A stretch of 64,000 nt of DNA, taken from NCBI RefSeq assembly GCF_036365525.1, contig NC_090404.1, forward strand, positions 4,216,001-4,280,000. Reading direction: 5' to 3'. The position numbers and the translations under genes are program-made. The notes under the pieces are model-generated. The model was not told the origin of the DNA. It saw only the letters and a program-made list of their open reading frames with translations, and ran no database searches. This stretch comes from Heterodontus francisci (lineage: Eukaryota). Positions 7,652-61,708 of the stretch are shown here, in pieces; position 1 is the first letter of the stretch, and every line of letters starts with the position of its first letter.

Positions 7652-8064
7652 GTGTATTTGTGTTTACCTGTCCTGATTTCTCAGTTAAGTATTGGGGGTG
7701 ACGGGCTGATTCTCGGAGATAGACGTTGGTTAATTTGATATTGCTCTGTTCTTGCAGGATATTGTCGAGGAGACTCCGTTTCACAGACACCGGCTGTAAT
7801 CACAGTAAGTGAAGGAGACGATGTTCGGTTGCACTGTGATTATACAACTACAAGCAGCAGCAATCCTTACCTATTCTGGTACCGTTAGTATCCCAGTGGA
7901 TACATGGAATATCTGCTGCAAAGAAACAAATACAGTGAGGACCGAGAAAGATTTCCAGAGGACCGTTTTTCAGCGGAGCTCGATGATTCGATCCGAACCA
8001 TCCCACTGAAAGAATCTAAAACAGAACTGACAGACTCTGCGGTGTACTACTGCGCACTGAGACC
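7652..8064 (+). pseudogene. TCR alpha/delta-type V pseudogene (V-d), nearly intact: leader 7652-7688, V exon 7758-8064
   Basis: YCRGDSVSQTPAVITVSEGDDVRLHCDYTTTSSSNPYLFWYR*YPSGYMEYLLQRNKY...DRFSAELDDSIRTIPLKESKTELTDSAVYYCALRP; single TAG at 7886-7888; leader begins with GTG. Confidence 0.92.
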
Positions 8065-8103
8065 CACAGAGACACAGAGCTGGGCTGATCCTGAACAAAA
8101 ACT
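8065..8103 (+). other. 23-RSS of V-d
   Basis: cacagag + 23 nt + acaaaaact. Confidence 0.9.
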
Positions 8104-8279
8104 GTCAGAGAGTCTCTCAACATCACAGCAAGTTAGGGAAACATTGTGATTGGAGGCGAGTGTCTGCATTAGTGATTAGAACTTGTACTGTTAATGTTAA
8201 TATACAGTTATCCTTTTTCCTGCAATGTTTCACTTTTCAAATAATGATCTAATTTCCTTTTAAAAGTAACGATTGAATC

Positions 8280-24418: not shown

Positions 24419-24813
24419 TCATTGACATGAATTAACGGTGTCCAACAGTGCAAGGGAAATGTTCACAAAACTCGGTTTACCGCTGGATTTATTAACTGTT
24501 CTGTTGATGATCTTCAAGGGGATCGCTTCATGTCCCACCACACAGGAGTAAGAAGTGCCGCTGGCCCACTCCTCTGCTGCAATGGATAACAGGCTGTAGA
24601 TGAAGAAGGAGCTCTTGTCGTTCTCCGCCATCACCTCGGTGTTCTTGTAGTTGCCGGGATTCACTGACTTGTCATTGACGGTCCACTTGACGAAGATCTC
24701 TCGGGGGGAGAAACCTCTCACTAAGCAGGTGAGGGAGAGGAACCTCTCAGCGGAGATTTCTTCTGCTGGGGGCAGGAGAACAGACACAGACGGTTCCCGC
24801 AGATCTTTCCATG
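24419..24813 (-). CDS. IGHM: IgM CH4 exon plus secretory tailpiece
   Basis: [15 protein letters not shown]...[17 protein letters not shown]...[43 protein letters not shown] (penultimate Cys, N-I-S glycan site); AATAAA at 24385-24390 and 24372-24377. Confidence 0.97.
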
Positions 24814-25282
24814 CTGAAAAATTAAAATAAATGTCAATAAACTAGACAATTTCAGAGACAATGACACCGGTGGTTAAATGTGAGAGAAATTGTGAAGGTT
24901 TTCCTTTTCCTCTCTGGGGCCTGTGCTGTTTTCCAGCCGGTGCAGAGGCGCTACAATCCTGCTCGCCGAGAACATAAAGGATTAGATTGGAAAATTACAT
25001 AGAACTTGCAGCACAGGAGCAGCTATTAGGAGGAGCTAGCCTATGCTGGTGTTTATGCTGCACACGGACCTCCTCCCACCTTACTTCAGCTCTTTCTATT
25101 CATTTCTCCATTATCTACGTATCTAGCATCACCTGAAATGCATCACCTCTGGTCCCAGGGAGGTTCAATAGTGAATTACAATTAAATTATCAGCGTAATC
25201 CATTCAACCACTTAATTGGGCCTTGCACAAACACCGGCAAGAAGCACAACCTCTGAGTTATTGCTTCAATCACATTGCTCAC

Positions 25283-25588
25283 CTTCCTTGTGGATGGAAT
25301 CTCTGAGAGGAGTCGGCAGATCCTGATGGCTCACCACACAGGAGAACACAGCCTCACTCAGCCAGGCTTGTGTCGAGATGTCTACAGTGCTGATCACGCT
25401 ATCGGGTTCCTCTCCGGGTTGGACGGCAATCTCTGATTTCAAAGGCTTCTGTTCTTGTGTCCAGGACACGTTGACACCATAAGGAGCATTAGACACGACG
25501 CAGGTTAAGGTGACCGTCGCCTTCAGTAAGACCTGTTCTATTGATGGTGGCAGTAGTTTAATTACTGGATGATTGCACTCGGAAGAAT
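25283..25588 (-). CDS. IGHM: IgM CH3 exon
   Basis: [31 protein letters not shown]...[21 protein letters not shown]; canonical splice sites, phase 1. Confidence 0.96.
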
Positions 25589-26089
25589 CTGTAGAACAGA
25601 AATGAGAGTCAAAGAAATCTCCATCTTCAGGATCAGGACGCGAGTATTTAACTATCACTTTCTTCAGGAGGGGAAAAACACCTTTCACTTCAACACTGTC
25701 GTTCATGGGAAGGGCAACGATTTGTAAAATCTGGGACATCCAAGCGGATCACATCTCTGCTGAATATAATGGCTCTGTCACCCCAGGACATGAGCTACAC
25801 ATGTAATTCATACTGGCTCAAAACGAATGAAATTACGAATTTTAGGACCAACTGGAAACAAAGTTAATGTTCTGGTGCCTTGTCAGTATATTTGGGGAGA
25901 TGAAAATGTTCAGCAACCAGACAGAGGAGGGGCGAAAGGTCGGTAAAATGCAGTCCCAAGGTTTTTGTGTGGTGAGGAATAATTCGCAATACTGGACGAG
26001 ATAGTTTTCTAATATCTGCCACGAGTGAGTATTTCTCATGTGTCGGCCTGGAGTTAGAAGGCGATCTGACCACAGGACTGTAATAAGAA

Positions 26090-26720
26090 CATAAGAATAA
26101 GAGTGGGCTATTCATCCCCTCGAGCACGTTCCGCCATTCAATTGCACGATGGCTGAATTGTATCTTAATTCTGTTTACCCATATATAACCCTTAATACCC
26201 TTACCTGTCAGAAATCTATCACTCACAACATTAAAATTTTCAATGGATGTCAAGCTTCTAAAGTGAATTGGGGGTGAGAATTCCAGATTACCGCTATCTA
26301 CTGTGTGAATACTCCCTTCCTGATATCATTCCTGAATGACCATGGTCTAATCTGAAGGTTATGCCCCCTTGTTCTGAAGTTCCTCACCAGAGGAAATATT
26401 TTTCTCCATTGACTCCATCAATTCCAGTAAACATCTTAACCACCTCAATTAGATCACCCTTTAATCTTCTATACTCAAAGCAATACCAGTTTGGCCTGTG
26501 AAACCTGTCCTCATAACTTAACCCGATCAGCCCCGTTATCATTATGGTCAATTCTTGTTGCACCACTCCCAAGGCCAATACATTCTTCCTGTGCTCTGCA
26601 GTCCAGAATTGAACACAGTTTTCTAAAGAGGGTAGATGCTCTTTCTGGCACCTGATTCCGAGGCCGTTACCAAGAAAGGGTTCCAGATGCCGATTGCTGC
26701 TCCGTGTATGATTAGCCCAT
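26090..26720 (-). mobile_element. CR1 LINE 3' fragment in the CH2-CH3 intron
   Basis: LENCVQFW...RRLKGDLIEVVKM. Confidence 0.8.
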
Positions 26721-26986
26721 TCAGGATAAAGCTGATATACAGGCCACCTCACTCACTATATAACATCACAGTAGAGCTAAACATTCTTTCATGATGTGAT
26801 GACATGTTGAACCGTGAGCAATCCTAATTTCTAATTTCTAAATCCTAAACTCACAGCCAAATAACACATAAAAACTGCACGATGGCGATTTAGAAATTGT
26901 TCTTTGTACAAACTCCAATAAATTCCTGACTTTCAGTAACATGGAGTACAGAAAGATGTGGAGTTTCCTGGGACTGTGCCTCTTAC

Positions 26987-27304
26987 CTGGAGATCCGGTG
27001 ATGTTTCGGCTTTGGGTGACCGCTTGATGGGAGACCTGGCAGGTATAGACCGTGTTGGTGAACCATTCCCGAGCGGGGACTGTCAGCCGACTGGTCGCTG
27101 AGAAGTTCCCGTTCGTTTCACAGGCGGGAGAGGTGACGAAGCCCGATTCCATGGGATGTCCATCCTTCAACCAACTCACGGTTATTGCTTCTGGATGGAA
27201 ATCGATGATTGAACACACGACAGTCGCAAATCTGCTGCTTCTGATTTCTTCACTGGAAGTCTGGGTGAGGATAACAGTTGGATGGACGATGTCACCTTTA
27301 CAAT
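26987..27304 (-). CDS. IGHM: IgM CH2 exon
   Basis: [14 protein letters not shown]...[21 protein letters not shown]...[20 protein letters not shown]; canonical splice sites. Confidence 0.96.
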
Positions 27305-27516
27305 CTTCAAGAAAAAACATGTTAGACATTTCTAGAAGAAATTAATAACTAATACAAACTGTTCTTATATTTTAACAGGTTATTTGCATCAAGCAGGCAC
27401 TAACTGATGTTTCCAGCGGTCTGAACTGTGCACAACACTCGAAATGTGGAATAGCCAAAGTTCTACACAAGATCCGTCGAGCTTTTCTGTTTTTCCACAG
27501 TTTCCACAACACTAAC

Positions 27517-27813
27517 CTGGAATTTCCTTGATCCAGAGCGACTCTCCGCGTCGAACCTCGCAGTAGATTTTGCTGCTTCCCACCTCTGACTCGGTGATGG
27601 TTAACTGGCTGCTCAGGGTGTAGGTTCCCTTCTTGTTCAGCACTGACGGGTAAGTCTTCAAACCAGTGGTGATCGGTTCTTCACCTTTCTTCCAGGAAAC
27701 GCTGGTGATTTGGGGGATGTAGTCCATCGCCAAACAGCCGTAGGCCATGGAGCCGTCGGTGTTGGGTTGTTCACAGGAGCACAGGCCGTAAAGGGTTGGG
27801 GGAGACGGTGTCG
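27517..27813 (-). CDS. IGHM: IgM CH1 exon
   Basis: [42 protein letters not shown]...[17 protein letters not shown]; closely resembles shark mu CH1. Confidence 0.96.
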
Positions 27814-29499
27814 CTAGGAAAGAATGGCAAATTGAACAAGTTAGACTGTGATTCATGCTTATTAAATAACCAGACATCTCGCAATTCGATTCCAGCTGGA
27901 AACTGATTCCAACATTTTCCGATTAAAACCTTCATCCGCATTTGAGCTGCGATCAGTTACATCATTTGGTGATCATCACCTGTGGGTCCCCTGGTCAGGA
28001 ACACACCTCTCTTTCAGGACCTGTCACATTACAAAAGTAAGAGCCTTTTGAAGTTATCTCAATAAGGTATTTTTCATTGGATTAAACTGAAAGAGGAGTT
28101 TCCCCGCTTTGTTCGGCCAATATTTATTTCTAAATCAACAACACTTGGTCAAAAAACATGCGGCATTTAATTTTTGGAAATTTCTTCTCTGCAAATTGAC
28201 TTCTGGGTTTCGCCGCACCTCCACCTCCTCCCAGCACCCCTCCCCACCACCAGCAGACCACCCCGCCCCCCCAACAACCACTCCCCCTCCAAAAAAATAG
28301 CAACTACTCCTAAAAAGTGCCATTGGAATGCGTGCTTATGAAATGAACGTAATACTGTAAACTTGAATACCAGGCAAATTCATTCCATTATTTTCCCATA
28401 AAAACCTACAAAACATCCGAACATGCTTATGACCCAGGGTGATAAATTCATAGACATGATAGCTGAGAAGAAGGCCATTCGGTCCATCAGGCCTGTGAAA
28501 GATGACCTTCCAATTTGTAATCTTTTCAAAATTTCATTTTATCCAGCTATTTTAGATTCTATTTACAGCCCTCTTTCTGATTGGACATTCCAGATCCTAA
28601 CAACCCCCTGTGTAGAAAAGTAGATTCATACCCTCTTCCTTCATTCTTTTGACGCTGATTTTAAATCAGTGCCCTCTACAGACCAACTCACTGATCTGGG
28701 CAAATTGGTATCTGAATTTCTGTATAAAATATTCATTATTCAAAACACCACTACCAGACTTCATTTTAATCTTCTATGTTCCCATAATAATGAAGAACTT
28801 TTACAATAAATAGTTGAAGTCTACTTTAAAATATGGACTGAATCATTTAGTACACAGATTTCAGAGGGGAATTTTTACACAGCCTAGTTTCTGGAATTAA
28901 AGTTTTTAATGACTCGGCAATTACTCTAAGCTATCACTTTCCTTTTCAGTACTTGAAGATTGTGACTTCTGTTCTATATTATTCGACTGAATGGATTCTC
29001 TGGAGTTTGCTTCTCCCTCCAACTCAAATAATAAACCGAATTAAATCCGATTCCTAAAAATCGGTCATTTGGACTGATGCGCTTTAAATGGTCCATTTAA
29101 CTTTCCAAAGTATCTTCCCACCCCTCACCAGTGAGAACTGGTGTTGCTGACTGTGTCGCTACAGACACATCTTCTTGCTGCTTGCACCGACCGTATTGTA
29201 AACATCAGGACAGGTTTCTTCTACAAATATCTGATATTGTCATTACTTACACATTATAAATCGAGTGAATATCAGTCGGTTCCAGGCAAGGAAGGACAAA
29301 AGTTCCTGAAGTGTTATTGCTGACATGGTCAACTCTCACTTCTGATTTGTGCGGACAATTCAAACACCTGAGGCCCATCGGTCTGATATTGGAAGCTCGC
29401 TCACCAATATGATGTGAAAGAGGATGCCGGTTATGCTGGCACAACAGTAGGACATATGGGCTTTCAAATGGCATTAGATAACATGTCAGGTAAGAGAAC

Positions 29500-31700: not shown

Positions 31701-34700
31701 TCTCTGAACTGTTATTTCTGACTGCCACAGACTGGAATTATGATCTCATTGCTGAGGCGCCTCATCAAACTTAAAGTCAAACTTTTAGGTTTCTCGGGGG
31801 TACAAGTTTCTTAATTAAATGGATCAAGTTGCACTCCTTGAAATGAAACGAACCAGTCTGTTTGCAACCTGCAGGGAGGATTCCTCGTCCTGACACAGTG
31901 AGCAGGCGCACAGAAACAGAACAGACACAAACGGTGCAACAATCGGGCTCTCAGCAGTTAGATCTGTTCAATTGTCAATTTCAATGAAGCTGTTTTATTC
32001 TAATTCATCAATTGTCAAATTGTGACCACTCCAGGTCTGTATACTCTTTGAAATTAAACTGATATTCATTTCAAAAACTCCCTTCGACCTCCAACTGTTT
32101 CTCCCTGTCTGTTTACAATCTGAAAAGCATGTAAGAAAGTTTCGCTTAAAATGAGTACATCAGAAGAATACACATTCAGGAAAATTAGATGTCCATAACC
32201 TGAACTCAGTGACAGAGTAAGAATTTAGCAAATCAGGAGATATTTATCTTGCAAACTGATTACCCACTGGTTTGATACAATTGCAGAATTCAATTTTACA
32301 AAAAGAAATAGTTGAACCACTGCTCAAAGTTAATTCATTAAAATCTGCGGTGACACTTGACTGAGCTGAGAACAGCTGACTAAGAAATGTATTGTTCTCT
32401 AAGTTATTGCCAGACATAATGAAATAATCTCTCCGATTCTTGAGATTTTGCACTCATTGGAATCCTGGCAAGTATACTATTGAATTGTGTGAGGCCATTT
32501 ATGTTTAATGAATTAGCACTATTATATTCTCATATAATATTCATGTTAGCTGATTTTATACTGTATTTATCATTTATAAATAAATGCAAATAAATAAATT
32601 AGTTAATATTACTTCAAGACCAGTTTCTGCCTGGCACCTTGTGAAATAATGGAGTTTTAATTAAGTCATTATGACACTTTATCAATATTAAATAATCAAC
32701 GTCATATTAATAGATGAAAACCTTCAGACAAATATATTACTTCATGCTGAAATCGAATCACAGTGCAATAATATAAAATGAACAATAACTTCTAGTCCCG
32801 CCATGCTTTCTCTCCACAAACTTGTAAACTGCGCAGGTATCTGAATGCGTTGATATATTATAAGCTCCTTCCATTCTCAACGAGTACTTCACACAATGGA
32901 TTTAGCCTGGCCCGGGTCACATGTCACTAACTGGGCTGCAACATAGCCTGTTTGTGAAAGCAGCTCTCCCGTGTTTAAATATCGTTATAAATCTTAACTA
33001 TATGTGATAAAATATCAAAAACATCCGGGCAATTTGCGATCAGTAACTGTGCTGCCACTATTTAATCACACGATGTTTTTAGATTTTACTCCCGTAATTC
33101 ACAAATTAATTGCTAAATATATTGTGATTTTTATTGAACGAAGTTCCAAAATGATCACTGCAAAACTGGACGTAAACAATTCTTTCAGATCATCTGTGAC
33201 ATTGAAACCTAATGAGCAAATGTAGCCGAGATTTGGCGGATCAATTTAATATTTATTAAGAATTCAGCATAACTCTCAGGTATAATCTGTTCTTTGTCTA
33301 TCATTCCATCCTGCGTGCAGCACAACTATGGGAGACAGGATGTTGTTACTGAATTCAAAACTAACATTAAACTTTTGTAATTAATTGAATCTGCTTGAAT
33401 TTCCAGGTGTTATTTGTTTGTCTTTAGCATTACGCAGTCTGCAAGTTTCTTCAATTTAAATAAAATCATATGCACAATTCTTTGACTGCCATTGACCTCT
33501 TGTCCCAGGAAAATGGTTAATATTAGATTAGTGATAATTATCTCACTATCCAACAACAAATGACATTGAAGAAAGAACATGGAAGAACATGAACTCAAAG
33601 AATGCAATAACCGGACAGATATATTACACTGACAAACTGCAATTTACAACGCCTATTTAAGTTGTAAGTAAATACAAGCTGACATTCACCTGTTTTAATC
33701 AGGAATATCACAATTAATTTAAAAGCGCTCATTAACCTGAAAACAGCACTGGAATAAGTACACTCTTATTGAAATAATTTCAAGCATAATTAAAAATAGT
33801 CTCCAGCCATAAAGCTTTCCGGTCACGACAATTGTGCGCTTGGCACACCAGAACTGTAAAAGACGATTCTTGAATAATGAATCCATCATAACATGAAAGC
33901 GTATTTGGTTTATATGAGGACATATTGCCGCATTTTAATTGTTTGAATTGTATTAATTTTACTCTCCAATCTGCAAACCTGCTACTTATTCAGTTTGTAA
34001 TTGCAGTAACATTTCACGGATTGAAGGAGCGTTACAAACCATGGCTTAACAGTTCAATCTGCAATTATCATTCAAATTTTTTTAAATGCCTTGAAATATC
34101 TTTTTTTTTATTTCTGAAATCTGCCTGTTATCCGGCTTTCGAATCGTCTTTGAAGCAGTTTCAAACAAACAGAATGTATCCATTTGATCGGAAAACCTGC
34201 AGCCGCTCGGTGTCACCCGGGTTCAATAAAGCAGAAACGCCAAATAGTTTTACAAATTTTACTTTGTAACACAGAGACACACTCTCCTCAGCAGATAAGC
34301 TCCAACTCACATCACTGAGGGGCTGAATCCCGCCTCAGTACGTTTCAAGGCGAAGCAGCTTAACTCCACAATCACTTTCAGCAGAATCAAATGTAACATC
34401 CCAAAAATAACATCTCAATACAGAATCCACCGAGCCTGCCTGTCTCTGAATTACCAAATATATAAAATAATGGCAGCAGATTTGTGAGTACAGAGAGCAT
34501 GTTTAATAAATTAATATTGATTCTGTAGCATATTTCATTGATATTGCCTGATATCACTGCATTATTAAAAGTGAGGTTATATTAATGTAAATCTGGCCAA
34601 AGCTGCAAATTTGTTATTGATGTAATTCTTAATTACATCAAAATTTATTGTATTACATATGAGCATTCGTAAGCAGTAGATTGATAGATAGCAATTTAAT

Positions 34701-35155
34701 TACCACTGCTCAAAATAGATCAAAATATCAGAAGGCTATTTTTGACCACTGAAGCTTTCTGCATAATTTTATTTCAAACATATTTAAAGACTTATTGTTT
34801 CTATTAGATCAGAAAACCTGCAGCAACTAGATGTCACCCAGATTAAACATTGCAGAAACGTCAAACGGTTTAACAACAGTTTGGTATTTAAAGTAGCCCA
34901 AACACTCAGTCCCATCAACAAATAAACACCAAATCACATCAATCTGGAGCTGAATCCTTCAACAGTACCGTGTGTAAAGAAACCATTAAGTTCTTTAATC
35001 CCTTTGCAGCAGAATCACATAAAACATTGCAACAAATCTCAATATAGAATCCACCAAATCCACTTTTCAGTGAACGACTGTATCATTACAATAAACAGAA
35101 ATATAAAATTAAAAACACAAATAAAACAGTTAATGAATAAATGTATGTTTCTTAC

Positions 35156-35203
35156 CTGCAGTCACCGTCACCATGGTCCCTTGTCCCCAGTACTCAAGAT
35201 AGT
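35156..35203 (-). CDS. IGHJ: JH segment
   Basis: YLEYWGQGTMVTVTA with WGxG motif and gtaag donor at 35155. Confidence 0.95.
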
Positions 35204-35205
35204 CC

Positions 35206-35220
35206 GGTATGGCAGTGGGT
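35206..35220 (+). other. D1 segment (ggtatggcagtgggt), inverted relative to V/J/C and fused to JH
   Basis: G-rich D-like 15-mer on the + strand followed by a 22-spacer RSS; abuts JH through cc (35204-35205), palindromic to its gg end. Confidence 0.8.
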
Positions 35221-35258
35221 CACGGTGCTGTACAGAGCGAGTTCTTCATCCAAAAACC
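35221..35258 (+). other. 22-bp-spacer RSS (D1 3' type)
   Basis: cacggtg + 22 nt + ccaaaaacc. Confidence 0.9.
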
Positions 35259-35569
35259 TCAGACAGGGAGTTTGCTCAAACCAGCGATCACTAACACGGC
35301 AGATGGTCCTTAAACAATGAGGGTTAAATATAAAATTGGGGAAATACAATATTGATTTGTAAAATTGTATAAAAGTCTCCTGCTTTATTCATGTTGACTG
35401 TCACGCTAAATCAGCACAGATGATTCAGAAATATTGCGATCCCTTTATAAATATAATGACTGGTATAAACTGAATTATCTCACTGATGTACTCTTAGGGT
35501 GATTGGAATCATGTTTTTGAGAGCGCTGTGAAATGTAATCTCTGTATTTTACAGTTAACAGTCCGCCGC

Positions 35570-35638
35570 AGTATTTGACACGGTATGTCTCACTGTGATA
35601 TATTGGGTGGCACAGCAGTTACTGTCAATACAAAAACT
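35570..35638 (+). other. D2 segment (35598-35610, atatattgggtgg) flanked by 12/12 RSSs
   Basis: agtatttga-12-cactgtg | atatattgggtgg | cacagca-12-acaaaaact. Confidence 0.93.
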
Positions 35639-35964
35639 CCCTCAGCACTAATTGATGAGTCTGGGTCAGTGCTCGCTTTAACAATCCAACTATATATACA
35701 GTGAAGTTCTATTTGTGTCCAGCACTGTCCTCCTAGCACGGTTTATTATGGATAAACGGATTAATTATTCATTCATCAGTTGGTGATTTCAATAATTGCT
35801 GATATGTTACTGTGTGAAATATAAATCATCAGGGAAATTTATAAAGAGTGAAAAGAATTATTAATGCAGTTATAATTTTACAAAGAACCATCAAGATTTT
35901 ATTTTGCCTCTGGAGTGTGGATATTTAAAATAATAATGGATTTCTCACTATTCTGTGCAGAGCC

Positions 35965-36031
35965 AGTTATTGTGTGACCCAGCCAAGGGAATGTAACACT
36001 GTGCACAGTGACACTAACCTGCACAAATACT
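35965..36031. other. Precise RSS signal joint: 23-RSS fused head-to-head to 12-RSS
   Basis: agttattgt-23-CACTGTG|CACAGTG-12-acaaatact with zero intervening bases (GTGCAC at 36001-36006). Confidence 0.95.
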
Positions 36032-36421
36032 GCACTCACTCTCTGTTCAGTACTGCCTCCCAATATTCACTTCAAATAAAAATTCACTTCTGATCTAATT
36101 CAGAATATATCCAAAAGTTTACACCATGCAGTAGGAATTGAACCCAGCTCCAAGTAACACCCTCCAGATATCAGTCACATTAAAACTAGCATCTTATCCA
36201 GATTTGCAATTGCTGATACTATTAACATTAAAAATCAGCACAGCCAAAATTAGTCGTCAGTACTTCGGTTAGTGTCTTAGATTTGTACCATTGAATTTTC
36301 ACTGTGCTACTTGTGTGAGAGACGGTCTATGGCCTGGTTCTGAACACTGCCGTTAATATTGTATTTAATAAAATTACTGACCATCAGTTTATGATGGAAG
36401 TTATCGAATTCTCTCTCCATA

Positions 36422-36460
36422 TGTTCTTGTACATGTCCAGCCCTGGTTCCTCTCATTGTG
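36422..36460 (-). other. VH 23-RSS
   Basis: Minus strand cacaatg + 23 nt + acaagaaca. Confidence 0.93.
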
Positions 36461-36765
36461 ATCTCTTGCACAGTAATAGATGGCGGTGTCTTCAGTCTTC
36501 AAGCTCTTCATGTCCAAAGCAAAAATGTTTTTGGAAGTGTCTTTGGACGCAGTAAATCGATCTTTAATCCCTGGGGCGTAGTAGTTGCTGGATGAACTAT
36601 AGTAGTGAACCAGCCACTCCAGCCCCTGTCCGGGAACCTGCCGGACCAAGCTCATCCAGTAGCTGCCAAGAGTGAACCCGCTGGTTTCACAGGTCAGTCT
36701 CAGGGAGCCTCCGGGTTTCCCGGTCTCTGCCTCTGGCTGAGTCAACACGATATCCGAATGGACAC
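36461..36765 (-). CDS. IGHV: IgM VH exon (open frame; conserved FR2 Trp replaced by Leu)
   Basis: [51 protein letters not shown]...RFTASKD...[10 protein letters not shown]. Confidence 0.96.
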
Positions 36766-36890
36766 CTGTAAAAAATATCAAAAACCCCGAGAATTAATCC
36801 TGGAGAAATGATTCCTGACTCTGTAATATTCCAGAGAGAGACTATCACTGATCCAATTAGTGAGAGACTCGGACAGTAAAAACTACTCAC

Positions 36891-36936
36891 GGTATAAGAA
36901 AACCAGCAACAGACTGAGAGAAATCGCCGACCTCAT
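36891..36936 (-). CDS. IGHV: IgM VH leader exon
   Basis: MRSAISLSLLLVFLY + c|gtgagt; 46 nt (phase 1); 125-bp intron to V. Confidence 0.93.
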
Positions 36937-41829: not shown

Positions 41830-43100
41830 TAGAATTAGAGAGTCATTTACGGCACAGACGGAAGCCATTCGGCCCATTGAGTACATGCTGGCTCTCCACA
41901 GAGCTTTTCAGTTAGTGCCCCACTGCCCCACTCGATCCTCGTAGCCCTGCAAGTCTATTTCCTTCAAATGACCATCCAGTTTCCTTTTGAAGTCATTTAT
42001 TGTCTCTGCTTCCACCACCTTTGTGGACAGCAATTTCCAAGTCATTACCACCCGCTGTGTCACAGCGTTCCTCTTCATATTACCCTTGCATCTATTGTCC
42101 AAAGCCTTCATTCTGTGTCCCCTAGTCCTTGTACCATTAGTTAATGTGAACGACTTTTCCTCCTCTAATATAAAATAAAACAAGAAATGCCGGAAATACT
42201 CAGCAGTATTTACACTCAGAACGGTATGTTAATGCCTTTGTTCCATGACCTTGTGGTCAGTTATTCTCTGTGATCCGATCTTATCAACACCTTCACCTTT
42301 GTTATCTCTTGCCCCACCCCCGCTTCACTTGCTTAAAACCTTTTACATTTCTAATATTTGTTAGTTCTGATGAAGGGTCACTGACCGGAAACATTAACTC
42401 TGTTTATCTCTGCACAGATGCTGCCAGACCTGCTGAGAATATCCAGCATTTCATGTTTTTATTTCAGATTTCCAGCATCTGCAGTATTTTGCTTTTATTT
42501 TTCACCTCTAACTTGCCTAAATCTGTCATAATCTTGTACATGTCTATTAATCTCCCCTCAACCTCTTTTGTTTGAAGAAGAATAAGCTCAGTTTTTCCAA
42601 CTTAACCTTGTCACTAAAATCCTCCATCCCCAGAACTATTCTAATAAATCTCTGTCAAGGACTCTCACATGCTTCCAAAAGTGTGGTGACCAGAACTGGA
42701 TGCAATACTCCAGCATTGGCCTGACCAGAGCTTTATAAATGTTCAGCGTAACTTCCCTGCTTTTGTACTCAATACCTGTGTTTATGAAGCCCAAGATCCC
42801 ATATGCTTGCCTAACCACTCTCTCAAGATGTTGTGCCACCTTCAAAGATCAATGCACATGCATCCCAATGTCCCCCTGTTCCTGTACACTCTTTAGAACT
42901 ATGCCATTAAGTAAATGCTGCCTCTCCCTTTTCCTTCTGCCAAAATGCATCACCTGCCACTTGTCTGTCCACTCTGCTGACCTATCTATGTCCTGTTGCA
43001 GTCGTTATATATCATCCTCACTATTTGCCATACCTCCACGTTTGGTGTCATCTGCAAATTTGGAGATTCTACTCCATGTTCCAAGATCCAAGTCTACGTA
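41830..43100 (-). mobile_element. CR1 LINE 3' fragment with a nested Penelope terminal segment (~42170-42500)
   Basis: LVRPMLEYCIQFWSP and RTRGHRMK...TQRVV. Confidence 0.85.
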
Positions 43101-43284
43101 GCTTTTGGTATTATTGCTATTTACCTTGAATTTTTGTCCTCTCGTTATCAACCGTTCTACCATTGGAAATATTTTCAATTTACATATTCTATCAAACGCA
43201 CCAACGCTCCTCAGACAGCACCTTCCAAACCCACAACCTCTACCACCTCGAAGGACAAGAGTACCAGATGCATGGGACCATCAC

Positions 43285-43575
43285 AGGGCGGCACAGTGGC
43301 GCAGCAGTTAGCACTGCAGCTTCACAGCTCCAGCGACCCGGCTTCAATTCTGGGTACTGCCAGTGTGGAGTTTGCAAGTTCTCCCACATCCAAAAGACTT
43401 GCAGGTAAATAGGTAAATTGGCCATTATAAATTGTCCCAAGTATAGGTAAGTGGTAGGGGAATATAGAGATAGGAGAGCATGTGGTAGGAATATGGGATT
43501 AGAGGAGGAATGGCATAAATGGGTGGTTAATGGTAGGCACAGACTTGGTGGGCCGAAAGGCCTGTTTCAGTGCTG
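43285..43575 (+). mobile_element. V-SINE (HE1-like) inserted in a LINE 3' fragment (43190-43835)
   Basis: gggcggcacagtggcgcagcagttagcactgcagc head; gggccgaaaggcctgtttcagtgctg tail. Confidence 0.8.
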
Positions 43576-50189: not shown

Positions 50190-52780
50190 GCTGGAAGGTT
50201 TAAGGTAGTTATGGAAAAGGACAAAGCTAGATCAGAAATAAAGGTACTGAATTGGGGGAAGGACGATTTCAATACGATAAAACAGTATCTGGCCTAAGTG
50301 GACTGGGAGCCGCTACTTGGAGGAAAGTCTACACCAGACCAGTGGGAGTCATTCAAGGAGGAAACAGTGAGAGTTCAAAGACAACATGTACCCGTTAAGG
50401 TGAAGGGAACCCTGGATGTCAAGGGATATAGAGGATTGGATCAGGAAAAAAGGAAGCTTTTGGCAGATTCACAGCGCTGAAAGCAGTGGAGGTACTAGAT
50501 GAGTATAGAAAGTGTAGCAGGGGGGTACTTAAAAAAGTAGTTAGGAGAGAGAAGAGTAGATAAGAAAAAACACTGGCAGGCTAGATAAAGGAAAATTCTA
50601 AAGCGTTTTCTAAGTATATTAAGGGTAAGAGGATAACCAGGGAAAGAGTAGGACCCATTAGGGACCAAAGGTGCAATCTCTGTGTGGAGCCGGAGGGCAT
50701 TGGTGAGGTTTTAAATGATTACTTTTAATCTGAGTTCACCATAGAGAAGGTCAATGTTGGTGTAGAGATCAGGGAAGGGGATTGTGATATACTTGAACAT
50801 ATTAGCATTGAAAGGGAGGAAGTATTAGCGGTTCTGGTGGGCTTAAAAGTGGATGAATCCCCAGGCCCAGATGAGATGTATCCCAGGCGGTTATGTGAGG
50901 CAAGGGAAGAGATAGCATGGACTCTGACACAAATTTTCAAATCTGCTCTGGCCACAGGAGAGGTACCAGAGGATTGGAGGACAGCGAATGTGGTACCATT
51001 ATTCAAGAAGGGTAGTAGGGATAAACCAGGGAATTACAGGCCGGTGAGTGTAACATCAGTGGTAAGGAAATTATTGGAAAAAACTCTGAGGGATAGGATT
51101 AATCTCCACTTGGAGAGGCAGGGATTAATCAGGGATAGGGAGCATGGCTTTGTCAGGGGGAGATCGTGTCTAACTAACTAGATTGAATGTTACAAGGCGG
51201 TGACTCAATGGATAGATGAGGATAAAGCAGTTGATATTCTACATGGACTTCAGTCAGGTTTTTGATAAGGTCCCACATGGGAGATTGTTTAAAAAGATAA
51301 GATCTCATGGGATCCAGGGCAATTTGGCATATTGGATCCAAAATTGGCTCAGTAGCAGGAGGCAGAGGGTTATGGTTGAGGGTTGTTTTTGCAAGTGAAA
51401 GCCTTTGACCAGTGGTGTACCGCAGGGATCGGTGCTGGGACCCATACTGTTTGTAGTGTACATTAATGATTTAGGCGTGAATATAGGAGGTGTGATCAGT
51501 AAGTTCGCAGATGACATGAAAATTGGTGGTGCCGTAAATAGTGAGGAGGATGGCCTTCCATTACAGGACGATATCGATGGGCTGGTAAGATGGGCGGAAC
51601 CGTGGCAAATAGAATTTAATCCTGAGAAGTGTGAGGTGATGCATTTTTGGAGTACTAATCAGGCAAGGGAATATATCGTGGATGGCAGGAACCTATGAAG
51701 TACAGAAGGTCAGAGGGACCTTGGAGTAATTGTCCATAGATCACTGAAAGCAGCAGCACAGGTAGATAAGATGGTTAATATAAAAGCAAAGTACTGCGGA
51801 TGCTGGAAATCTGAAACAAAAACAAGAAATGCTGGAATCACTCAGCAGGTCTGGCAGCATCTGTGGAAAGAGAAGCAGAGTTAACGTTTCAGGTCAGTGA
51901 CCCTTCTTCGGATAAGATGGTTCGCAGGGCATATGAAAATTATTAGAGGCATTTATGGGATCGATAGGAAGAAACATTTTCCCTCATGCGGATAGGTCAA
52001 TAACTAGGGGACATAGATTTAAGATAAGGGGCAGGAGTTTTAGAGGGGAGTGGAGGAAAGAAAATTCACCCAGAGGTTGATTGGAATCTGGAACACACTG
52101 CCTGAAGAGGTTGTAGAGGCAGGAACACACACGACATTTAAGAAGTATTTAGATGAGCACTTGAAATGCCATAGTATACAAGACTATGGGTCAAGTGCGG
52201 GCAAGTGGGATTACTTTTGGACAGGTGCTTGATGGTCAGCGCAGGGGCTCTGGGCCGAAGGGCCTGCTTCTGTGGTGTAAAACTCTATGACTCTGTAGGA
52301 TTCTTGACTTTATGAGCCGAGGCATTGAATATAAGAGCAGGGAGGTTATGATGGAGCTGTATAAAACACTGGTTAGGCTACAGCTGGAGTACTGTGAACA
52401 GTTCTGGGCACCACACTATTGGAAGGATGTGATTGCAGCCTCAGGAGAGGGTGCACAGGAGATTCACCAGGATGTTGCCTGGGCTGAAGCATTTCAGCTA
52501 TGCAGAGAGACTGAAAAGGCTAGGGTTGTTTTACTTAGATCAGAGAAGGCTGAGGGGAACATGATTGAGGTATACAAAATTATGAGGGGCAGTGATAGGT
52601 TGGATAGGAAGAAAATGTTTCGCTCAGCGGAGGCGTCAATAACCAGGGAGCATAGATTTAAGGTAAGGGGCAGGAGGTTTAGAGGGGATTTGAGGAATTT
52701 GTTTTTCACTCTGAGGATGGTTGGAATCTGGAATGCACTGCATGAAGAGGTGGTGGAGGCAGGAACCTTCACAACGTTTA
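50190..52780 (+). mobile_element. CR1 LINE ORF2 fragments inserted in the satellite
   Basis: SPGPDEMYPR, VPEDWRTANVVPLFKKG, SKFADDMK, LEYCEQFWAP. Confidence 0.9.
51777..51910. mobile_element. 134-bp Penelope-terminus insertion with a 12-bp target-site duplication
   Basis: gataagatggtt at both 51765-51776 and 51911-51922. Confidence 0.8.
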
Positions 52781-53681
52781 CACGATATAACACTAGACCA
52801 TGTTTCAGTTATGACTGGACTTCGTTGCATCTCGGTTTATATTACACTAACCCTATCTCTGTTCTTACTGCACCAGTCCCTGTCTCTGTTTATATTACAC
52901 TGGACCCTCTCTCGGTTTATATCACACTGGGCCATGTTGGTTTTTCACTGCACTAGGCCATGTTTCCAGTAGATGAAGAGATATTATTATAAATAAAGAT
53001 GTTAGACTGGAAATTGGTATCAGGTTACGGCCGAACGGACGCTTTTGGCTCGGCCGCCCTTTCTACCCAGGGCCTTGTGTTCAATTTCATTGCAGTCAAC
53101 GGAGTTGCTGTCTCTCCCGGGCGGTCAATCCGATAGTGACGCTTTCTGTGCCACTGCCTGAAACCAATTTCCATCTTTTGTGTTTGTGTGTTGGGCGGGT
53201 ATAATCATTTTCTGTATGGAAGAATACCTTTAACCTTGTTAATACCTATCAGTAGCTTGTGTGAAATTTCTAATTGCTCTGGTATTATGTGGGTAATATT
53301 TGTGTTGAAAGGATGGGCTGAATCCTGCAACAAGCTCCCAGAGACGGACTGGGTGGGATTGAAGGACAGGACTAAAGGTCAGTAATAGTGTACTGCACTT
53401 TACAATACTTGGTAACAAACTCTGTTGTGTTAAAGTGTACTAATTCACACTTGTGTTGTACTGTGACAATTCCTCACTTTTTAATGTTCAGGATATTTTT
53501 GTCGCTGCGGGATTTTCAATTTCGAATTCACCTGACCTCGTGATTGTGTTCGAAACAGCCTGGAACAGTGACCCCGCAGTCCCAACCGACAGGCTGCCGC
53601 AGGGTCCTAATGTCCACCAAGTTCAATCATCTGATCAACAGGGACAACTGAAATGAAAACACACAATGTTATATATCGGCG

Positions 53682-58345: not shown

Positions 58346-61300
58346 CATAGAGTTATGCAGGACATAAACAGGCCCTTCGGCCCATTGTGTCTTTCCCGTT
58401 CATCAAGCACCTAACTATTCTAATCCCATTTTCCAGCTGTTGGCTCAGAGCCTTGTACACGATGGCGTTTCAGGTGCTCATCTACATACTTCTTGTTGTG
58501 AGGGTTCCTGCCTCTAACACCTCTTCAGGCAGTGCATTCTAGATTCCAGCCACTCTCTGGGTGAAAATGTTTTCCTCAAATCCACTCTAAACCTCCTGCA
58601 CCTTACCTTAAATCTATGCCCGCTGGTTATTGACCGCTCGGCTAAGGGAAAATGTTTCTTCCTATCTAACCTATCAATGCCCCTCTAAATTTTGTATCCC
58701 TCAATCATATCTCCCCTCACCCTTCTCTGCTCTAAGGAAAACAACCGTAGCCTTTTCAGTCTCTCTGCATCGCTGAAATGCTCCAGCCCAAGCAGCATCC
58801 TGGTGAATCTTCTCAGCACCCTCTCCAGTGCAATCACATCCTTCCTATAGTGTGGTGCCCAGAACTGTGCACAGTACTCCAGCTGTGGCCTGACTAGCAT
58901 TTTATACAGCTGCATCATAACCTCCCTGCTCTGAAATTCTATGCCTCGGCTCATGAAGGCAAGTATCCCATATGCTTTCCTAACCACCTTATCTACCTGT
59001 GCTGCTGCCTTCTGTGATCTATGGACAAGTATACCAAGGTTCCTCTGACCCTCTGTATTTCCTAGGGTCCTACCATCCGTTGTATATTCCCCTGCCTTGT
59101 TAGTCCTCTCAAAATGCATCACATCACACTTCTCAGGATTAAATTCCATTTGCCAAAGCTCCACCCATCTTACCAGCCCATCAACATCGGCCTGGAATCT
59201 GAGGCTTTCCTCCTCACTATTTATGACACCACCAATTTTCGTGTCATCTGCGAACCTACTTACCATACCTCCTATGTTCACGTCTAAATCAATAATGTAC
59301 ACTAAAAACAGCAAGGGTCGCAGCAACAATCCCTGTGGTACACTACTGGTCACAGGCTTCCACTCACAAAAACAACCCTCGACCATCACCCTCTGCCTCC
59401 TGCCACTGAGCCCATTTTGGATCCAATTTGCCAAATTGCTTCTTGACCAATCTCCCATGTGGGACCTTATCAAAAGCCTTACTGAGGTCCATCAATACTG
59501 CATCAACTGCTTTATTCTCATCTACAAAATGTCACCACCGCCTCAAAACATTCAATCAAGCTAGTCAGACACGATCTCCCACTGACAAAGCAATGCTGAC
59601 TATCCCTGATTAATCCCTTCCTCTCCAATTGGAGATTAATCCTGTCCCTCAGAGATTTTTCCAATAGTTTCCCAACCAATGATGTTAGACTCACCGGCCT
59701 GTAATTCCCTGGTTTATCCGTCCTACCCTTCTTGAATAATGGTACCACATTCGCTGTCCTCCAATCCTCTGGTACCTCTCACGTGGCCAGAGCAGATTTG
59801 AAAATTTGTGCCAGAGTCCTTGCTATCCCTTCCCTTGCCTCACATAACAGCCTGGGATACATCTCATCTGGGCCTGGGGATTTATACACTTTTAAGCCCA
59901 CCAGAACCGCTAATACTTCCTCACTTTCAATGCTAATATGTTCAAGTATATCACAATCCCCCTCCCTGATCTCTACACCTACATCGTCCTTCTCCATAGT
60001 GAACACAGATGAAAAGTAATCATTTAAAACCTCACCTATGTTCTCCGGCTCCACACACAGAATGCCACTTTGGTCCCTAATGGGTCCTACGCTTTCCCTG
60101 GTTATCCTCTTGCCTTTAATATACTTGCAAAACGCCTTAGGATTTTCCTTTATCTTGCCTGCCAGTGTTTTTTCATGTCCCCTCTTCGCTCTCCTAATTA
60201 CTAATTTAAGTACCCCCCCCCCCTACAATTTCTATACTCGTCTAGTGCCTCCACTGTTTTCAGCACACTGAATATGCCATAAGGTTCCGTTTTTTTACTG
60301 ATCCAATCCTCTATATCCCTTAACATCCAGGGTTCCCTGAACTTGTTGGTTCTACCCTTCACCTTACGGGTTACATGTTGGCTCTGAACTCTCACTATTT
60401 CCTCTTTGAATGACTCCCACTGATCTGATGTCGACTTTCCTCCAAGTAGCTGCTCTAAGTCCATTTTGGCCAGATCATGTTTTATCATCCGAAAATCGGC
60501 CTTCTCCCAATTCAGTCCCTTTATTTTCCGTCCATCTTTGTCCTTTTCCATAACTACCTTAAATCTTGCAGAGTTATGGACACTATCCCCGAAATGTTCC
60601 CCCACTGACACTTCTACCACTTGTCCGGCTTCATTCCCTAGGATTAGGTCCAGTACTGTCCCTTCTCTTGTTTGGACTATCTCCGTACTGGCTCAAGAAG
60701 CTCTCCTGGATGCATTTTAAGAATTCTGCCCCCTTTAAGCTATTTGCACTGAGACGATCCCAGTTGATATTGGGGAAGTTGAAATTCCCTGCTATTATTA
60801 CCCTATTATTTTTACATCTCTCTGAGATTTGCCTACATATCTGCTCCTCTATCTCTCCCTGACTATTTGGAGGTCTGTAGTACACTCCCAGCCAAGTGAT
60901 TGCCCCCTTTGTGTTTTTAAGTTCTACCCATTTGAGGAACCTTCTAAGATATCATCCCTCCTTATTGCAATAATTGACTCCTTGATCAACAGTGCAAGGC
61001 CAACTCCTCTTTTACACCCTCCCCTATCATGCCTGCAGATTCTATTCCCTGGGATACTGAGCTGCCAGCACTGCCCTTCCCTCAACAATGACCCTGTGAC
61101 AGTAATAATACCATATTCCCATGTGTTAATCAACACCCTCAATTCATCTGCCTTACTTGTAAGACTCCTTGCATTAAAATAGATGCAATCCAGCCTTGCA
61201 TTTTGCACTTGTGCCTTAACAGGTCTATATTTGCTCTGCCTTCCAGATTGACTCAGTTTATATCGATGACTGTGCATCACCCTCTACTATACCTACACTC

Positions 61301-61708
61301 AGTATCCCATCCCCCTGCCAAGTTAGTTTAAACCCCCCACCCCCACACCCCCCAATAGCACTAGCAAACCTCCCAGCAAGGATGTTGGCCCGTTCCGGTT
61401 CAGGTGCAACCCGTCCAACTTGTACAGGTCCCAAATTTGCCAGAAACAGACCCAGTGATCCAGGAAACTAAAGCCTTCCCTCCTGCACCACCTCCTCAGC
61501 CACGCATTCACCTGCTCTATCCTTCTAATCCTATACTCACTAGCACGTGGCACCGAGAGTAATCCAGGGATTACAACCTTTGAGATCCTGCTTGTTCATC
61601 TTCTTCCTAGCTCACTAAATTCTTGTTACAGGACCTCATCCCTCTTTTCACCTATGTCGTTGGTGCCAAAGTATACTACGACCTCTGACTGTTCCCCTCC
61701 CCTTTCAG
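58346..61708 (-). mobile_element. 5'-truncated CR1 LINE (end of ORF1 plus ORF2), degenerate
   Basis: DLYKLDGLHLN, CIYFNARSL, YYRPPNS, SRFADDTK, VRPQLEYCAQFW; aatat on both flanks. Confidence 0.92.

What the first reader, a model, noticed from the sequence alone, without database searches (positions are those of the whole stretch)
35156..36031. RAG-type inversion fixed in an IgM cluster, with both coding joint and signal joint retained in place
Seen: V, JH and Cmu are on the minus strand. The block 35206-36003 instead reads on the + strand as D1-like 15-mer, 22-RSS, 12-RSS, D2, 12-RSS, 23-RSS. Its right end is fused heptamer-to-heptamer to a 12-RSS and its left end is fused directly to JH. Established: the horn shark IgM cluster is VH(23)-(12)D1(22)-(12)D2(12)-(23)JH, and sharks carry germline-joined VD and VDJ clusters. 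Inference: RAG paired the D1 5' 12-RSS with the JH 23-RSS. These signals point the same way, so the ~800-bp segment inverted and both reciprocal junctions stayed on the chromosome. Deletional germline joins lose the signal joint, so this locus would be unusually direct evidence for RAG activity in the germline lineage. I do not recognise this configuration (V - signal joint - D2inv - D1inv/J) but cannot exclude an earlier report.
Basis: partly seen in the sequence, partly recalled or inferred. Interest (0 to 1): 0.96.

Follow-up and report, generated by a model that had tools for sequence, protein, structure and literature searches.

The report
Inverted D-J join in shark IgM
In one horn-shark-type antibody (IgM) gene cluster, the 798-base piece carrying both D segments has been flipped exactly at recombination signals, leaving both scars of a RAG cut-and-rejoin event (a perfect signal joint and a D1-J coding joint) in the assembled chromosome; this would be unusually direct evidence that the antibody recombinase has acted on heritable DNA, but inheritance was not shown here.

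Summary
On the minus strand lie a VH gene, a JH and four open Cmu exons. Between V and J, block 35206-36003 (D1, 22-RSS, 12-RSS, D2, 12-RSS, JH-type 23-RSS) lies in the opposite orientation. Its right end forms a perfect heptamer-to-heptamer 12/23 signal joint. Its left end joins D1 head-to-head to JH with at most one extra base. Undoing the inversion in silico restores the canonical horn-shark layout.

Contigs of paralogous clusters from public runs of the same species join JH to the reverse complement of 36003 downwards. Another contig stops exactly at 36004.

A RAG-type inversional join of the D1 5' 12-RSS with the JH 23-RSS is the best explanation.

Not shown:
- No read bridging the window's own junctions could be displayed.
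- The tissue of origin is unknown.
- "Fixed" is untested.

Germline joining and one germline hybrid-joint inversion are already known in horn shark. I found no report of a germline-retained signal joint, so this is a new variant of a known kind. Unchecked notes from this scan report further VH-signal-joint cassettes 2.4 Mb away in the same genome.

The parts
36890..36936 (-). VH leader exon (MRSAISLSLLLVFLY..)
   Evidence: One search gives the coordinates. The leader is nearly identical to that of Heterodontus francisci HV01.
36461..36766 (-). VH exon with an open frame. It carries Leu (TTG, 36647-36649) at the otherwise invariant Trp41.
   Evidence: Pfam V-set E 1.4e-15. 85% identity to HV01_HETFR. 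All four homologues have Trp at this position. All laid contigs read C at 36648, which gives TGG (table 3).
36422..36460 (-). VH 23-RSS, CACAATG-23-ACAAGAACA, in normal position
36032..36421 (-). V-D1 intervening sequence (390 bp), in the original orientation
   Evidence: Paralog contigs align co-linearly over 36004-36316 (records 6 and 7).
36004..36031 (-). D1 5' 12-RSS (nonamer-12-heptamer on the coding strand). It stayed in place and forms one half of the signal joint.
   Evidence: A paralog contig stops exactly at 36004 (record 7).
35965..36003 (+). JH-type 23-RSS, inverted. It forms the other half of the signal joint, fused at 36003|36004 without loss or addition.
   Evidence: In paralogs this sequence abuts JH on the opposite strand (joints 35199->36003 and 35204->36002).
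35639..35964 (+). D2-J intervening sequence, inverted
   Evidence: record 5: a paralog contig aligns to 35751-36003, ends its alignment exactly at 36003 and has 34 further letters. I take these to be JH, matching the 34-letter side of the joint 35199->36003.
35570..35638 (+). 12-RSS, D2 (ATATATTGGGTGG, 35598-35610) and 12-RSS, inverted as a unit
   Evidence: The D2 5' 12-RSS is 77% complementary to the D1 5' 12-RSS, meaning the two are inverted relative to each other (pair I1).
35259..35569 (+). D1-D2 intervening sequence, inverted
35221..35258 (+). D1 3' 22-RSS, CACGGTG-22-CCAAAAACC. On the coding strand it now serves as the 5' signal of the fused D1inv-JH.
35206..35220 (+). D1 15-mer GGTATGGCAGTGGGT, antisense to V, J and C
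35205..35206 (.). Coding joint between the D1 5' end and the JH 5' end. C35205 is a possible single P or N base.
   Evidence: the paralog JH coding end is at 35204, with 1 ambiguous letter that is the first C of the heptamer. The P-nucleotide reading is an inference.
35156..35204 (-). JH (..DYLEYWGQGTMVTVTA) followed by a GT splice donor
   Evidence: With the antisense D1 the J frame reads PTAIPDYLEYWGQGTMVTVTA without a stop.
24422..27922 (-). Cmu1 to Cmu4 exons, lying within the open frames 27515-27922, 26841-27341, 25269-25748 and 24422-24841. Cmu4 carries a secretory tail.
   Evidence: Pfam C1-set E 3e-11 to 2e-21. Translations.

Best explanation
This is a horn-shark-type IgM minilocus. 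RAG (V(D)J recombinase) synapsed the 12-RSS on the 5' side of D1 with the 23-RSS of JH. The two signals point the same way. Cleavage and rejoining therefore inverted the 798-bp segment between them instead of deleting it.

The two signal ends were ligated exactly, giving the signal joint at 36003|36004. The two coding ends, D1 5' and JH 5', were ligated head to head with at most one added base, giving the coding joint at 35205/35206.

Because the arrangement sits in the assembled chromosome, the event most likely happened in the germ line or very early embryo and is inherited on at least this haplotype.

On the coding strand the cluster now reads V[23] ... [12][23] ... [12]D2inv[12] ... [22](D1inv-JH). 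By the 12/23 rule it could still assemble V-D2inv-(D1inv.JH) through two deletions, with an open J frame.

Shown: the geometry, the exact junctions and the canonical state in paralogs. Inferred: RAG as the agent, the germline timing and any residual function.
For: - RSS layout and exact heptamer-heptamer fusion. The 14-mer is unique, with 0.01 expected by chance.
- In-silico reversal restores V(23)-(12)D1(22)-(12)D2(12)-(23)J.
- The partner signals obey the 12/23 rule and had the same polarity, which predicts inversion.
- Contigs of paralogous clusters from four runs of one sample of the same species show JH continuing into the reverse complement of 36003/36002. This is seen as two distinct joints. 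Another contig ends at 36004.
- No inverted repeats flank the breakpoints, so homologous recombination is unlikely.
- The signal joint is precise and the coding joint carries 0-1 added base. This fits a TdT-poor cell, as reported for germline-joined nurse-shark L-chain genes (PMC2193156).
- The window has no N, and the 798-bp block is far shorter than a long read. That second point rests on my assumption that this is a long-read assembly.
- V, J and Cmu1-4 are open.
Against: - No contig or read bridging the window's own junctions at 99% identity or more could be displayed. Logan contigs drop rare variants in multi-copy families, and only 38% of the locus's sampled words were found.
- The tissue used for the assembly is unknown. 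Other shark reference genomes were made from blood or spleen, which contain lymphocytes.
- The germline D1 5' end of this cluster is not known, so the processing of the coding joint is inferred.
- The V exon carries Leu at the invariant Trp41, so the cluster may be decaying rather than in use.
Confidence: 0.72

Rival explanations
1. The inversion is a somatic rearrangement made in a lymphocyte, or in a thymocyte where shark IgH clusters are often partly rearranged. It entered the assembly because the DNA came from blood or spleen.
For: - VGP shark genomes are often made from blood or spleen.
- Nurse-shark thymocytes carry many partial IgH rearrangements (PMC2435157).
- I could not show reads across the junctions.
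Against: - A consensus assembly follows the majority of reads of a haplotype, and any one lymphocyte clone is a tiny minority.
- Shark blood DNA is mostly from nucleated erythrocytes (own knowledge).
- Somatic shark junctions usually carry N regions, whereas this coding joint has at most one extra base and the signal joint has none.
Confidence: 0.12
2. The same final structure arose by RAG, but not by a single intra-cluster step. For example, signals of two neighbouring clusters recombined, or an excised intermediate was re-ligated.
For: - Unchecked notes from this scan report head-to-head IgM clusters and orphan VH-signal-joint cassettes elsewhere on the same chromosome.
- One 86%-identical paralog contig appears to run 12 nt past the 12-RSS heptamer (record 6).
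Against: - One inversion explains every feature.
- Segment spacing after reversal is regular for a single cluster: 390, 311 and 326 bp.
- Nothing is missing or duplicated.
Confidence: 0.08
3. The inversion is an assembly artefact.
For: IgM clusters are a multi-copy family. Many positions of the window are not represented in the short-read contigs (table 3).
Against: - Breakpoints fall to the base at two RSS heptamer borders.
- There are no flanking inverted repeats and no N.
- The block is much shorter than a long read.
- An artefact would not create a perfect 12/23 signal joint and a matching coding joint.
- Contigs holding window-specific letters do exist, for example C at 35250 in run X3 (table 3).
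Confidence: 0.04
4. The inversion is real but not made by RAG. It arose by microhomology or replication error, and the fit to RSSs is coincidence.
For: None specific.
Against: - Both breakpoints lie exactly at heptamer/coding borders of a 12/23-compatible pair.
- The signal joint 14-mer is expected 0.01 times per window.
Confidence: 0.02

Closest known systems
Germline-joined Ig clusters of cartilaginous fish (horn shark VD-J and VDJ, Kokubu 1988; nurse shark NS4 VJ, Lee et al. 2000, PMC2193156)
   Same: Both are inherited products of V(D)J-type joining inside a minilocus. Both have coding joints with little or no N region. The same species carries VDJ-joined and D(D)J-joined paralogs (joints 35191->36463 and 35203->36004).
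   Different: The known cases are deletional, so the signal joint is lost and no RSS trace remains. Here the join is inversional, the reciprocal signal joint is kept, D1 is fused to J in antisense, and V and D2 remain unjoined.
Germline hybrid-joint inversion of the D1-D2 intervening sequence in a horn shark VH cluster (Kokubu 1988, as described by Lewis and Wu 2000, PMC2193153)
   Same: Same species group and same kind of locus. Both are RSS-bounded inversions attributed to RAG acting in the germ line.
   Different: That event swapped RSSs by hybrid joints between the D1 3' and D2 5' signals and produced neither a signal joint nor a coding joint. Here the partners are the D1 5' 12-RSS and the JH 23-RSS, with standard signal and coding joints. 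I could not read the original paper because it is not held.
Somatic inversional V(D)J joining (mammalian Ig kappa, TRBV30-type inverted V, teleost IgL clusters; PMC2118803, PMC11264764 and PMC3014032, listed)
   Same: Identical topology: same-polarity 12/23 signals, inverted intervening DNA, and the signal joint retained on the chromosome.
   Different: Those joins occur in lymphocytes between segments laid out for inversion, and they give a sense-oriented exon. This one sits in an assembled genome, in a locus described as requiring deletional joining (PMC5192425), and it places D1 in antisense.
Lewis and Wu model for the birth of D segments from germline signal joints (PMC2193153, Fig. 2B ii)
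   Same: A chromosomal 12|23 signal joint is a pair of outward-facing RSSs with nothing between them. That is the proposed precursor of a D segment.
   Different: [quoted passage not shown] Here the joint has zero inserted bases and arose, most simply, within one cluster.

Membership tests
Standard RAG inversional recombination product | The partner signals are one 12-spacer and one 23-spacer RSS. | tested here: met
   A 12-RSS at 36004-36031 and a 23-RSS at 35965-36003. Both heptamers are perfect and both nonamers match 7 of 9.
Standard RAG inversional recombination product | Precise heptamer-to-heptamer signal joint | tested here: met
   CACTGTG|CACAGTG at 35997-36010, with no base lost or added.
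Standard RAG inversional recombination product | A reciprocal coding joint between the two coding flanks, with at most small processing | tested here: met
   The D1 5' end at 35206 is joined to JH (germline end 35204 in a paralog), with one base, C35205, between them. The germline D1 end of this cluster is not known.
Standard RAG inversional recombination product | The intervening DNA is retained and inverted relative to the unrearranged state. | tested here: met
   Reversal restores the canonical order. Paralog contigs show JH abutting the reverse complement of 36003 downwards.
Germline-joined shark Ig gene | Present in non-lymphoid or germ-cell DNA and inherited | not testable with these tools
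   Only its presence in the assembly is known. Read laying gave contigs of paralogs, with no displayed record bridging the window's own junctions. The tissue is unknown.
Germline-joined shark Ig gene | Two or more of V, D and J are fused without an intervening RSS. | tested here: met
   D1 (antisense) is fused to JH at 35205/35206.
Hybrid-joint inversion (Kokubu-type RSS swap) | Each RSS ends up on the other partner's coding segment, and no signal joint forms. | tested here: not met
   A signal joint is present. D1 keeps its 22-RSS and D2 keeps both its 12-RSSs.
RAG transposition or reinsertion of an excised signal-ended fragment | The fragment is bounded by two signal ends and flanked by a 3-5 bp target-site duplication. 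| tested here: not met
   The block has one signal end (36003) and one coding end (35206). There is no duplication at the borders.
Horn shark (Heterodontus) IgM minilocus | V(23)-(12)D1(22)-(12)D2(12)-(23)J within about 1.3 kb, followed by Cmu1-4. The layout is from my own knowledge of Kokubu 1988 and Litman reviews. | tested here: met
   The layout appears after reversal of the block. The V-J distance is 1271 bp. The leader and V are closest to HV01_HETFR. There are four C1-set exons.

The most novel reading that the evidence does not exclude
The 12|23 signal joint at 35965-36031 is a heritable 'zero-length D' flanked by working signals. Together with the other VH-signal-joint cassettes noted 2.4 Mb away, it would show that RAG in the horn-shark germ line has repeatedly made inversional as well as deletional joins. 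That would give the first physical example of the proposed route by which new D segments and new RSS arrangements arise. The cluster would still rearrange as V-D2inv-(D1inv.JH) and be expressed with a part-fixed CDR3.
Probability: 0.3. Interest if true: 0.85.

Novelty: new variant of a known kind. Interest (0 to 1): 0.66.

Why it matters
Germline-joined shark Ig genes are the classic argument that RAG can reshape heritable DNA. They are deletional, however, so the reciprocal product is lost. Lee et al. 2000 noted that for H-chain clusters it was unclear whether RAG or the RSSs were involved at all.

An inversion keeps both products side by side. An exact 12/23 signal joint is a signature that only RSS-directed cleavage leaves. 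If inherited, this locus would be direct molecular evidence for germline RAG activity.

It would also show that a locus described as requiring deletional joining can invert. And it would give a real example of a chromosomal signal joint, the postulated raw material for new D segments.

There is a practical point as well. V-to-J PCR sizing, as used for nurse-shark intermediates, would score such an inversion as germline-sized, so similar events may have been overlooked. This last point is my inference.

Tried and rejected
I could not fetch unrearranged clusters from bamboo shark, catshark or whale shark genomes found through the V search. No base-by-base alignment to a canonical cluster was possible.
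  - It gave the canonical J|23-RSS joints.
  - It cannot show whether the window's own junctions are read-supported. Only some records are listed, the contigs collapse a multi-copy family, and only 0.38 of the sampled words were found.
- **Some literature was not available.** Kokubu 1988 (PMC454840) and Hsu 2016 (PMC4874517) are not held. Hinds-Frey 1993 is held as abstract only. Published horn-shark D1, D2 and JH sequences could therefore not be compared.
- **Seven full-text searches went through, and none named a germline signal joint or a D1-J inversion**. Three further attempts were rejected for term format.
- **Explanations rejected:**
  - Homologous recombination between inverted repeats: none lie at the breakpoints.
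  - Hybrid joint and RAG transposition: see the membership tests.
  - Chance RSS-like motifs.
- **Extended homology between the V-D1 spacer and the block was looked for as an internal orientation marker.** Only the two 12-RSSs and a short D2-like stretch matched, which is too weak to use.

Full report
**What is there**

The window carries a complete IgM heavy-chain minilocus on the minus strand.
- A leader exon at 36936-36890.
- An open VH exon at 36766-36461 (Pfam V-set).
- A JH at 35205/35204-35156, followed by a GT donor.
- About 7 kb further on, four open C1-set exons. The last has a secretory tail.

The leader (MRSAISLSLLLVFLY..) and the V region are closest to Heterodontus francisci HV01, at 85% identity over V. 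The genome is therefore a horn shark or a close relative.

**The observation**

Shuffled sequence gives about 1.6 per window.

On the coding (minus) strand the order is as follows:
- V, then CACAATG-23-ACAAGAACA.
- 390 bp of spacer.
- AGTATTTGT-12-CACTGTG, directly abutting CACAGTG-23-ACAATAACT.
- 326 bp of spacer.
- 12-RSS, reverse complement of D2, 12-RSS.
- 311 bp of spacer.
- GGTTTTTGG-22-CACCGTG, then the reverse complement of D1 (ACCCACTGCCATACC), then JH.

The head-to-head heptamer 14-mer is unique in the window and expected 0.01 times by chance.

**What it is**

Cutting out 35206-36003 and re-inserting it in reverse orientation in silico yields V(23)-(12)D1(22)-(12)D2(12)-(23)J. To my knowledge this is the published horn-shark layout, including the unusual 22-bp spacer.

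The two signals that now abut are a 12-RSS and a 23-RSS. In the reversed model both point the same way. [quoted passage not shown] Both products are present.
- The signal joint is exact.
- The coding joint unites the 5' end of D1 with the 5' end of JH.

**Evidence from other clusters of the same species**

Four runs of one sample held parts of the locus as short contigs. Laid at 85% likeness, they show several things.
- Two different 'opposite strands' joints link JH to the 23-RSS: 35199 to 36003, and 35204 to 36002 with one ambiguous letter.
- In these paralogs JH therefore runs straight into the reverse complement of the 23-RSS that the window holds 800 bp away in the other orientation.
- A 510-nt contig aligns to 35751-36003, stops exactly at 36003 and has 34 more letters.
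- A 328-nt contig aligns to 36316-36004 and stops exactly at 36004 with 15 more letters. That is the length of D1, but I did not see the letters.

It is met fully on the J/23-RSS side and indirectly on the D1/12-RSS side.

The ambiguous letter in the second joint is the first C of the heptamer, so the germline JH end is 35204. C35205 is then an extra base. It is complementary to the first G of D1 and could be a P nucleotide, but that is an inference.

**Alternatives**

- Homologous recombination is unlikely, because no inverted repeats flank the breakpoints.
- A hybrid-joint inversion is excluded, because D1 and D2 keep their own signals and a signal joint exists.
- RAG transposition is excluded, because the block has one signal end and one coding end and no target duplication.
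- Misassembly is unlikely. It would not produce two junctions exactly at heptamer borders with a matching reciprocal joint. The window also has no N.

The serious rival is a somatic, lymphocyte-derived molecule. Other shark reference genomes were made from blood or spleen. Against this, a consensus assembly follows the majority of reads, and somatic shark junctions usually carry N regions. [quoted passage not shown]

I could not test the point. The listed records include none at 99% identity or more that bridges the window's own junctions.

Window-specific letters do occur in the sample. For example, C at 35250 is seen at depth about 7 in run X3 (table 3). The locus is therefore probably present in that animal, but its arrangement there is unknown.

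**How it would work now**

This section is inference from the 12/23 rule. On the coding strand the fused D1inv-JH is preceded by a 22-RSS and behaves like a long J. In the J frame it reads PTAIPDYLEYWGQGTMVTVTA without a stop.

The inverted D2 is flanked by two 12-RSSs and has no stop in any frame. Two deletional joins would build a VDJ exon and remove the signal joint: D2inv to D1inv.JH, and V to D2inv.

The signal joint itself is a 12/23-flanked element of zero length and could take part as well.

Use of the cluster is doubtful, though. Its V has Leu (TTG) at the invariant Trp41. All four homologues inspected have Trp, and every laid contig reads the Trp codon at 36648 (table 3).

**Comparison with what is known**

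Germline joining (VD-J, VDJ, VJ) in cartilaginous fish is long established.

A germline RSS-bounded inversion is also on record. Two horn-shark clusters differ by inversion of the D1-D2 intervening sequence, explained as hybrid joints (Kokubu 1988 as described in PMC2193153).

I did not find any report of a standard inversional join with a retained signal joint in germline DNA. Related statements in the literature point the same way.
- Lee et al. 2000 speculated that inverted V-gene orientation in catfish L-chain loci might hinder the rare germline joining event, because reintegration needs ligation at two sites.
- The same paper noted that no RSS trace remains in joined genes.
- Lewis and Wu's scheme for making D segments from germline signal joints was the one route without an example.

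The original Kokubu paper and Hsu's 2016 review were not available to me, so an earlier mention cannot be excluded.

**Context from this scan**

These are unchecked AI notes. The same genome is said to hold a 'germline-fixed RAG signal joint behind an intact VH' and 'two convergent orphan VH-signal-joint cassettes' about 2.42 Mb beyond this window. It is also said to hold IgM clusters interspersed with TCR alpha/delta V genes.

Two of my own observations fit these notes.
- A paralog contig of 86% identity runs 12 nt past the 12-RSS heptamer into signal-joint-like sequence (record 6).
- A TCR-type V fragment with a 23-RSS lies at 7889-8146.

The scan has thus noted similar signal joints on other DNA of this genome. 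None has been followed up.

**Verdict**

- The RAG-type inversional D1-to-JH join is strongly supported as the origin of the structure.
- Germline status is likely but untested, and 'fixed' is unsupported.
- It is a new variant of a known kind of event: germline V(D)J recombination in sharks.
- It is of real interest to specialists because it preserves the signal joint.

Noticed in passing
window:7889-8146 (+), RSS at 8065-8103: A V-set fragment ending ..DSAVYYCALRP, followed by CACAGAG-23-ACAAAAACT. It looks like a TCR alpha/delta-type V (possibly a pseudogene, since only the FR2-FR3 part is in one frame), 28 kb from the IgM cluster and on the opposite strand. This fits the reported Ig/TCR-alpha-delta linkage in elasmobranchs (PMC12227049).
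   Followed up: partly
window:35203 to 36004 (joint 'skips 800', 27 letters between): A paralogous cluster in the sequenced sample has the D1 5' 12-RSS heptamer followed by 27 nt and then JH. Depth is about 10, like the other single-copy contigs. This looks like a germline V-D(D)J-joined cluster, a type I do not recall for horn shark.
   Followed up: no
window:35191 to 36463 and 35192 to 36464: Two different contigs join the V end to JH with 24 and 36 nt between them. These are fully VDJ-joined paralogs, as known for horn shark.
   Followed up: no
window:35442 and 36044 (joint 'opposite strands', side 158): A contig links the middle of the D1-D2 spacer to the V-D1 spacer just outside the 12-RSS, on opposite strands. 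It could be a canonical paralog with a divergent or missing D1 unit, or another rearranged form. It remains unexplained.
   Followed up: no
window:35992-36260 (records 6/14/22/31): A paralog contig of 86% identity aligns through the 12-RSS and 12 nt beyond its heptamer, into the heptamer and first spacer bases of the 23-RSS. It may come from another locus with a signal joint. Compare the scan's notes on VH-signal-joint cassettes 2.42 Mb away.
   Followed up: partly
window:36647-36649 (-): The invariant Trp41 of the V domain is Leu (TTG) in this cluster only. All laid contigs and all homologues inspected have Trp. This may be a sign of relaxed constraint on this V.
   Followed up: partly
window:36054-36070 (-): A D2-like stretch (ATATTGGGAGGCAGTAC, against D2 ATATTGGGTGGCACAG) lies in coding orientation about 20 bp upstream of the D1 12-RSS nonamer. 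An RSS-like CACAGTG-24-ACACTAACC lies at 36306-36267. Either could be a relic of an older element or chance.
   Followed up: partly
window:33600-35155: The J-Cmu intron begins with a diverged tandem duplication of about 620 bp (34796-35055 against 34175-34431, 72% identity). Paralog contigs show 'goes back 549/567' joints here, so copy number varies between clusters.
   Followed up: partly
window:8200-20200, 42000-43400, 50700-52950, 58600-61600: There are many LINE/reverse-transcriptase-like open frames on both strands around the cluster.
   Followed up: no
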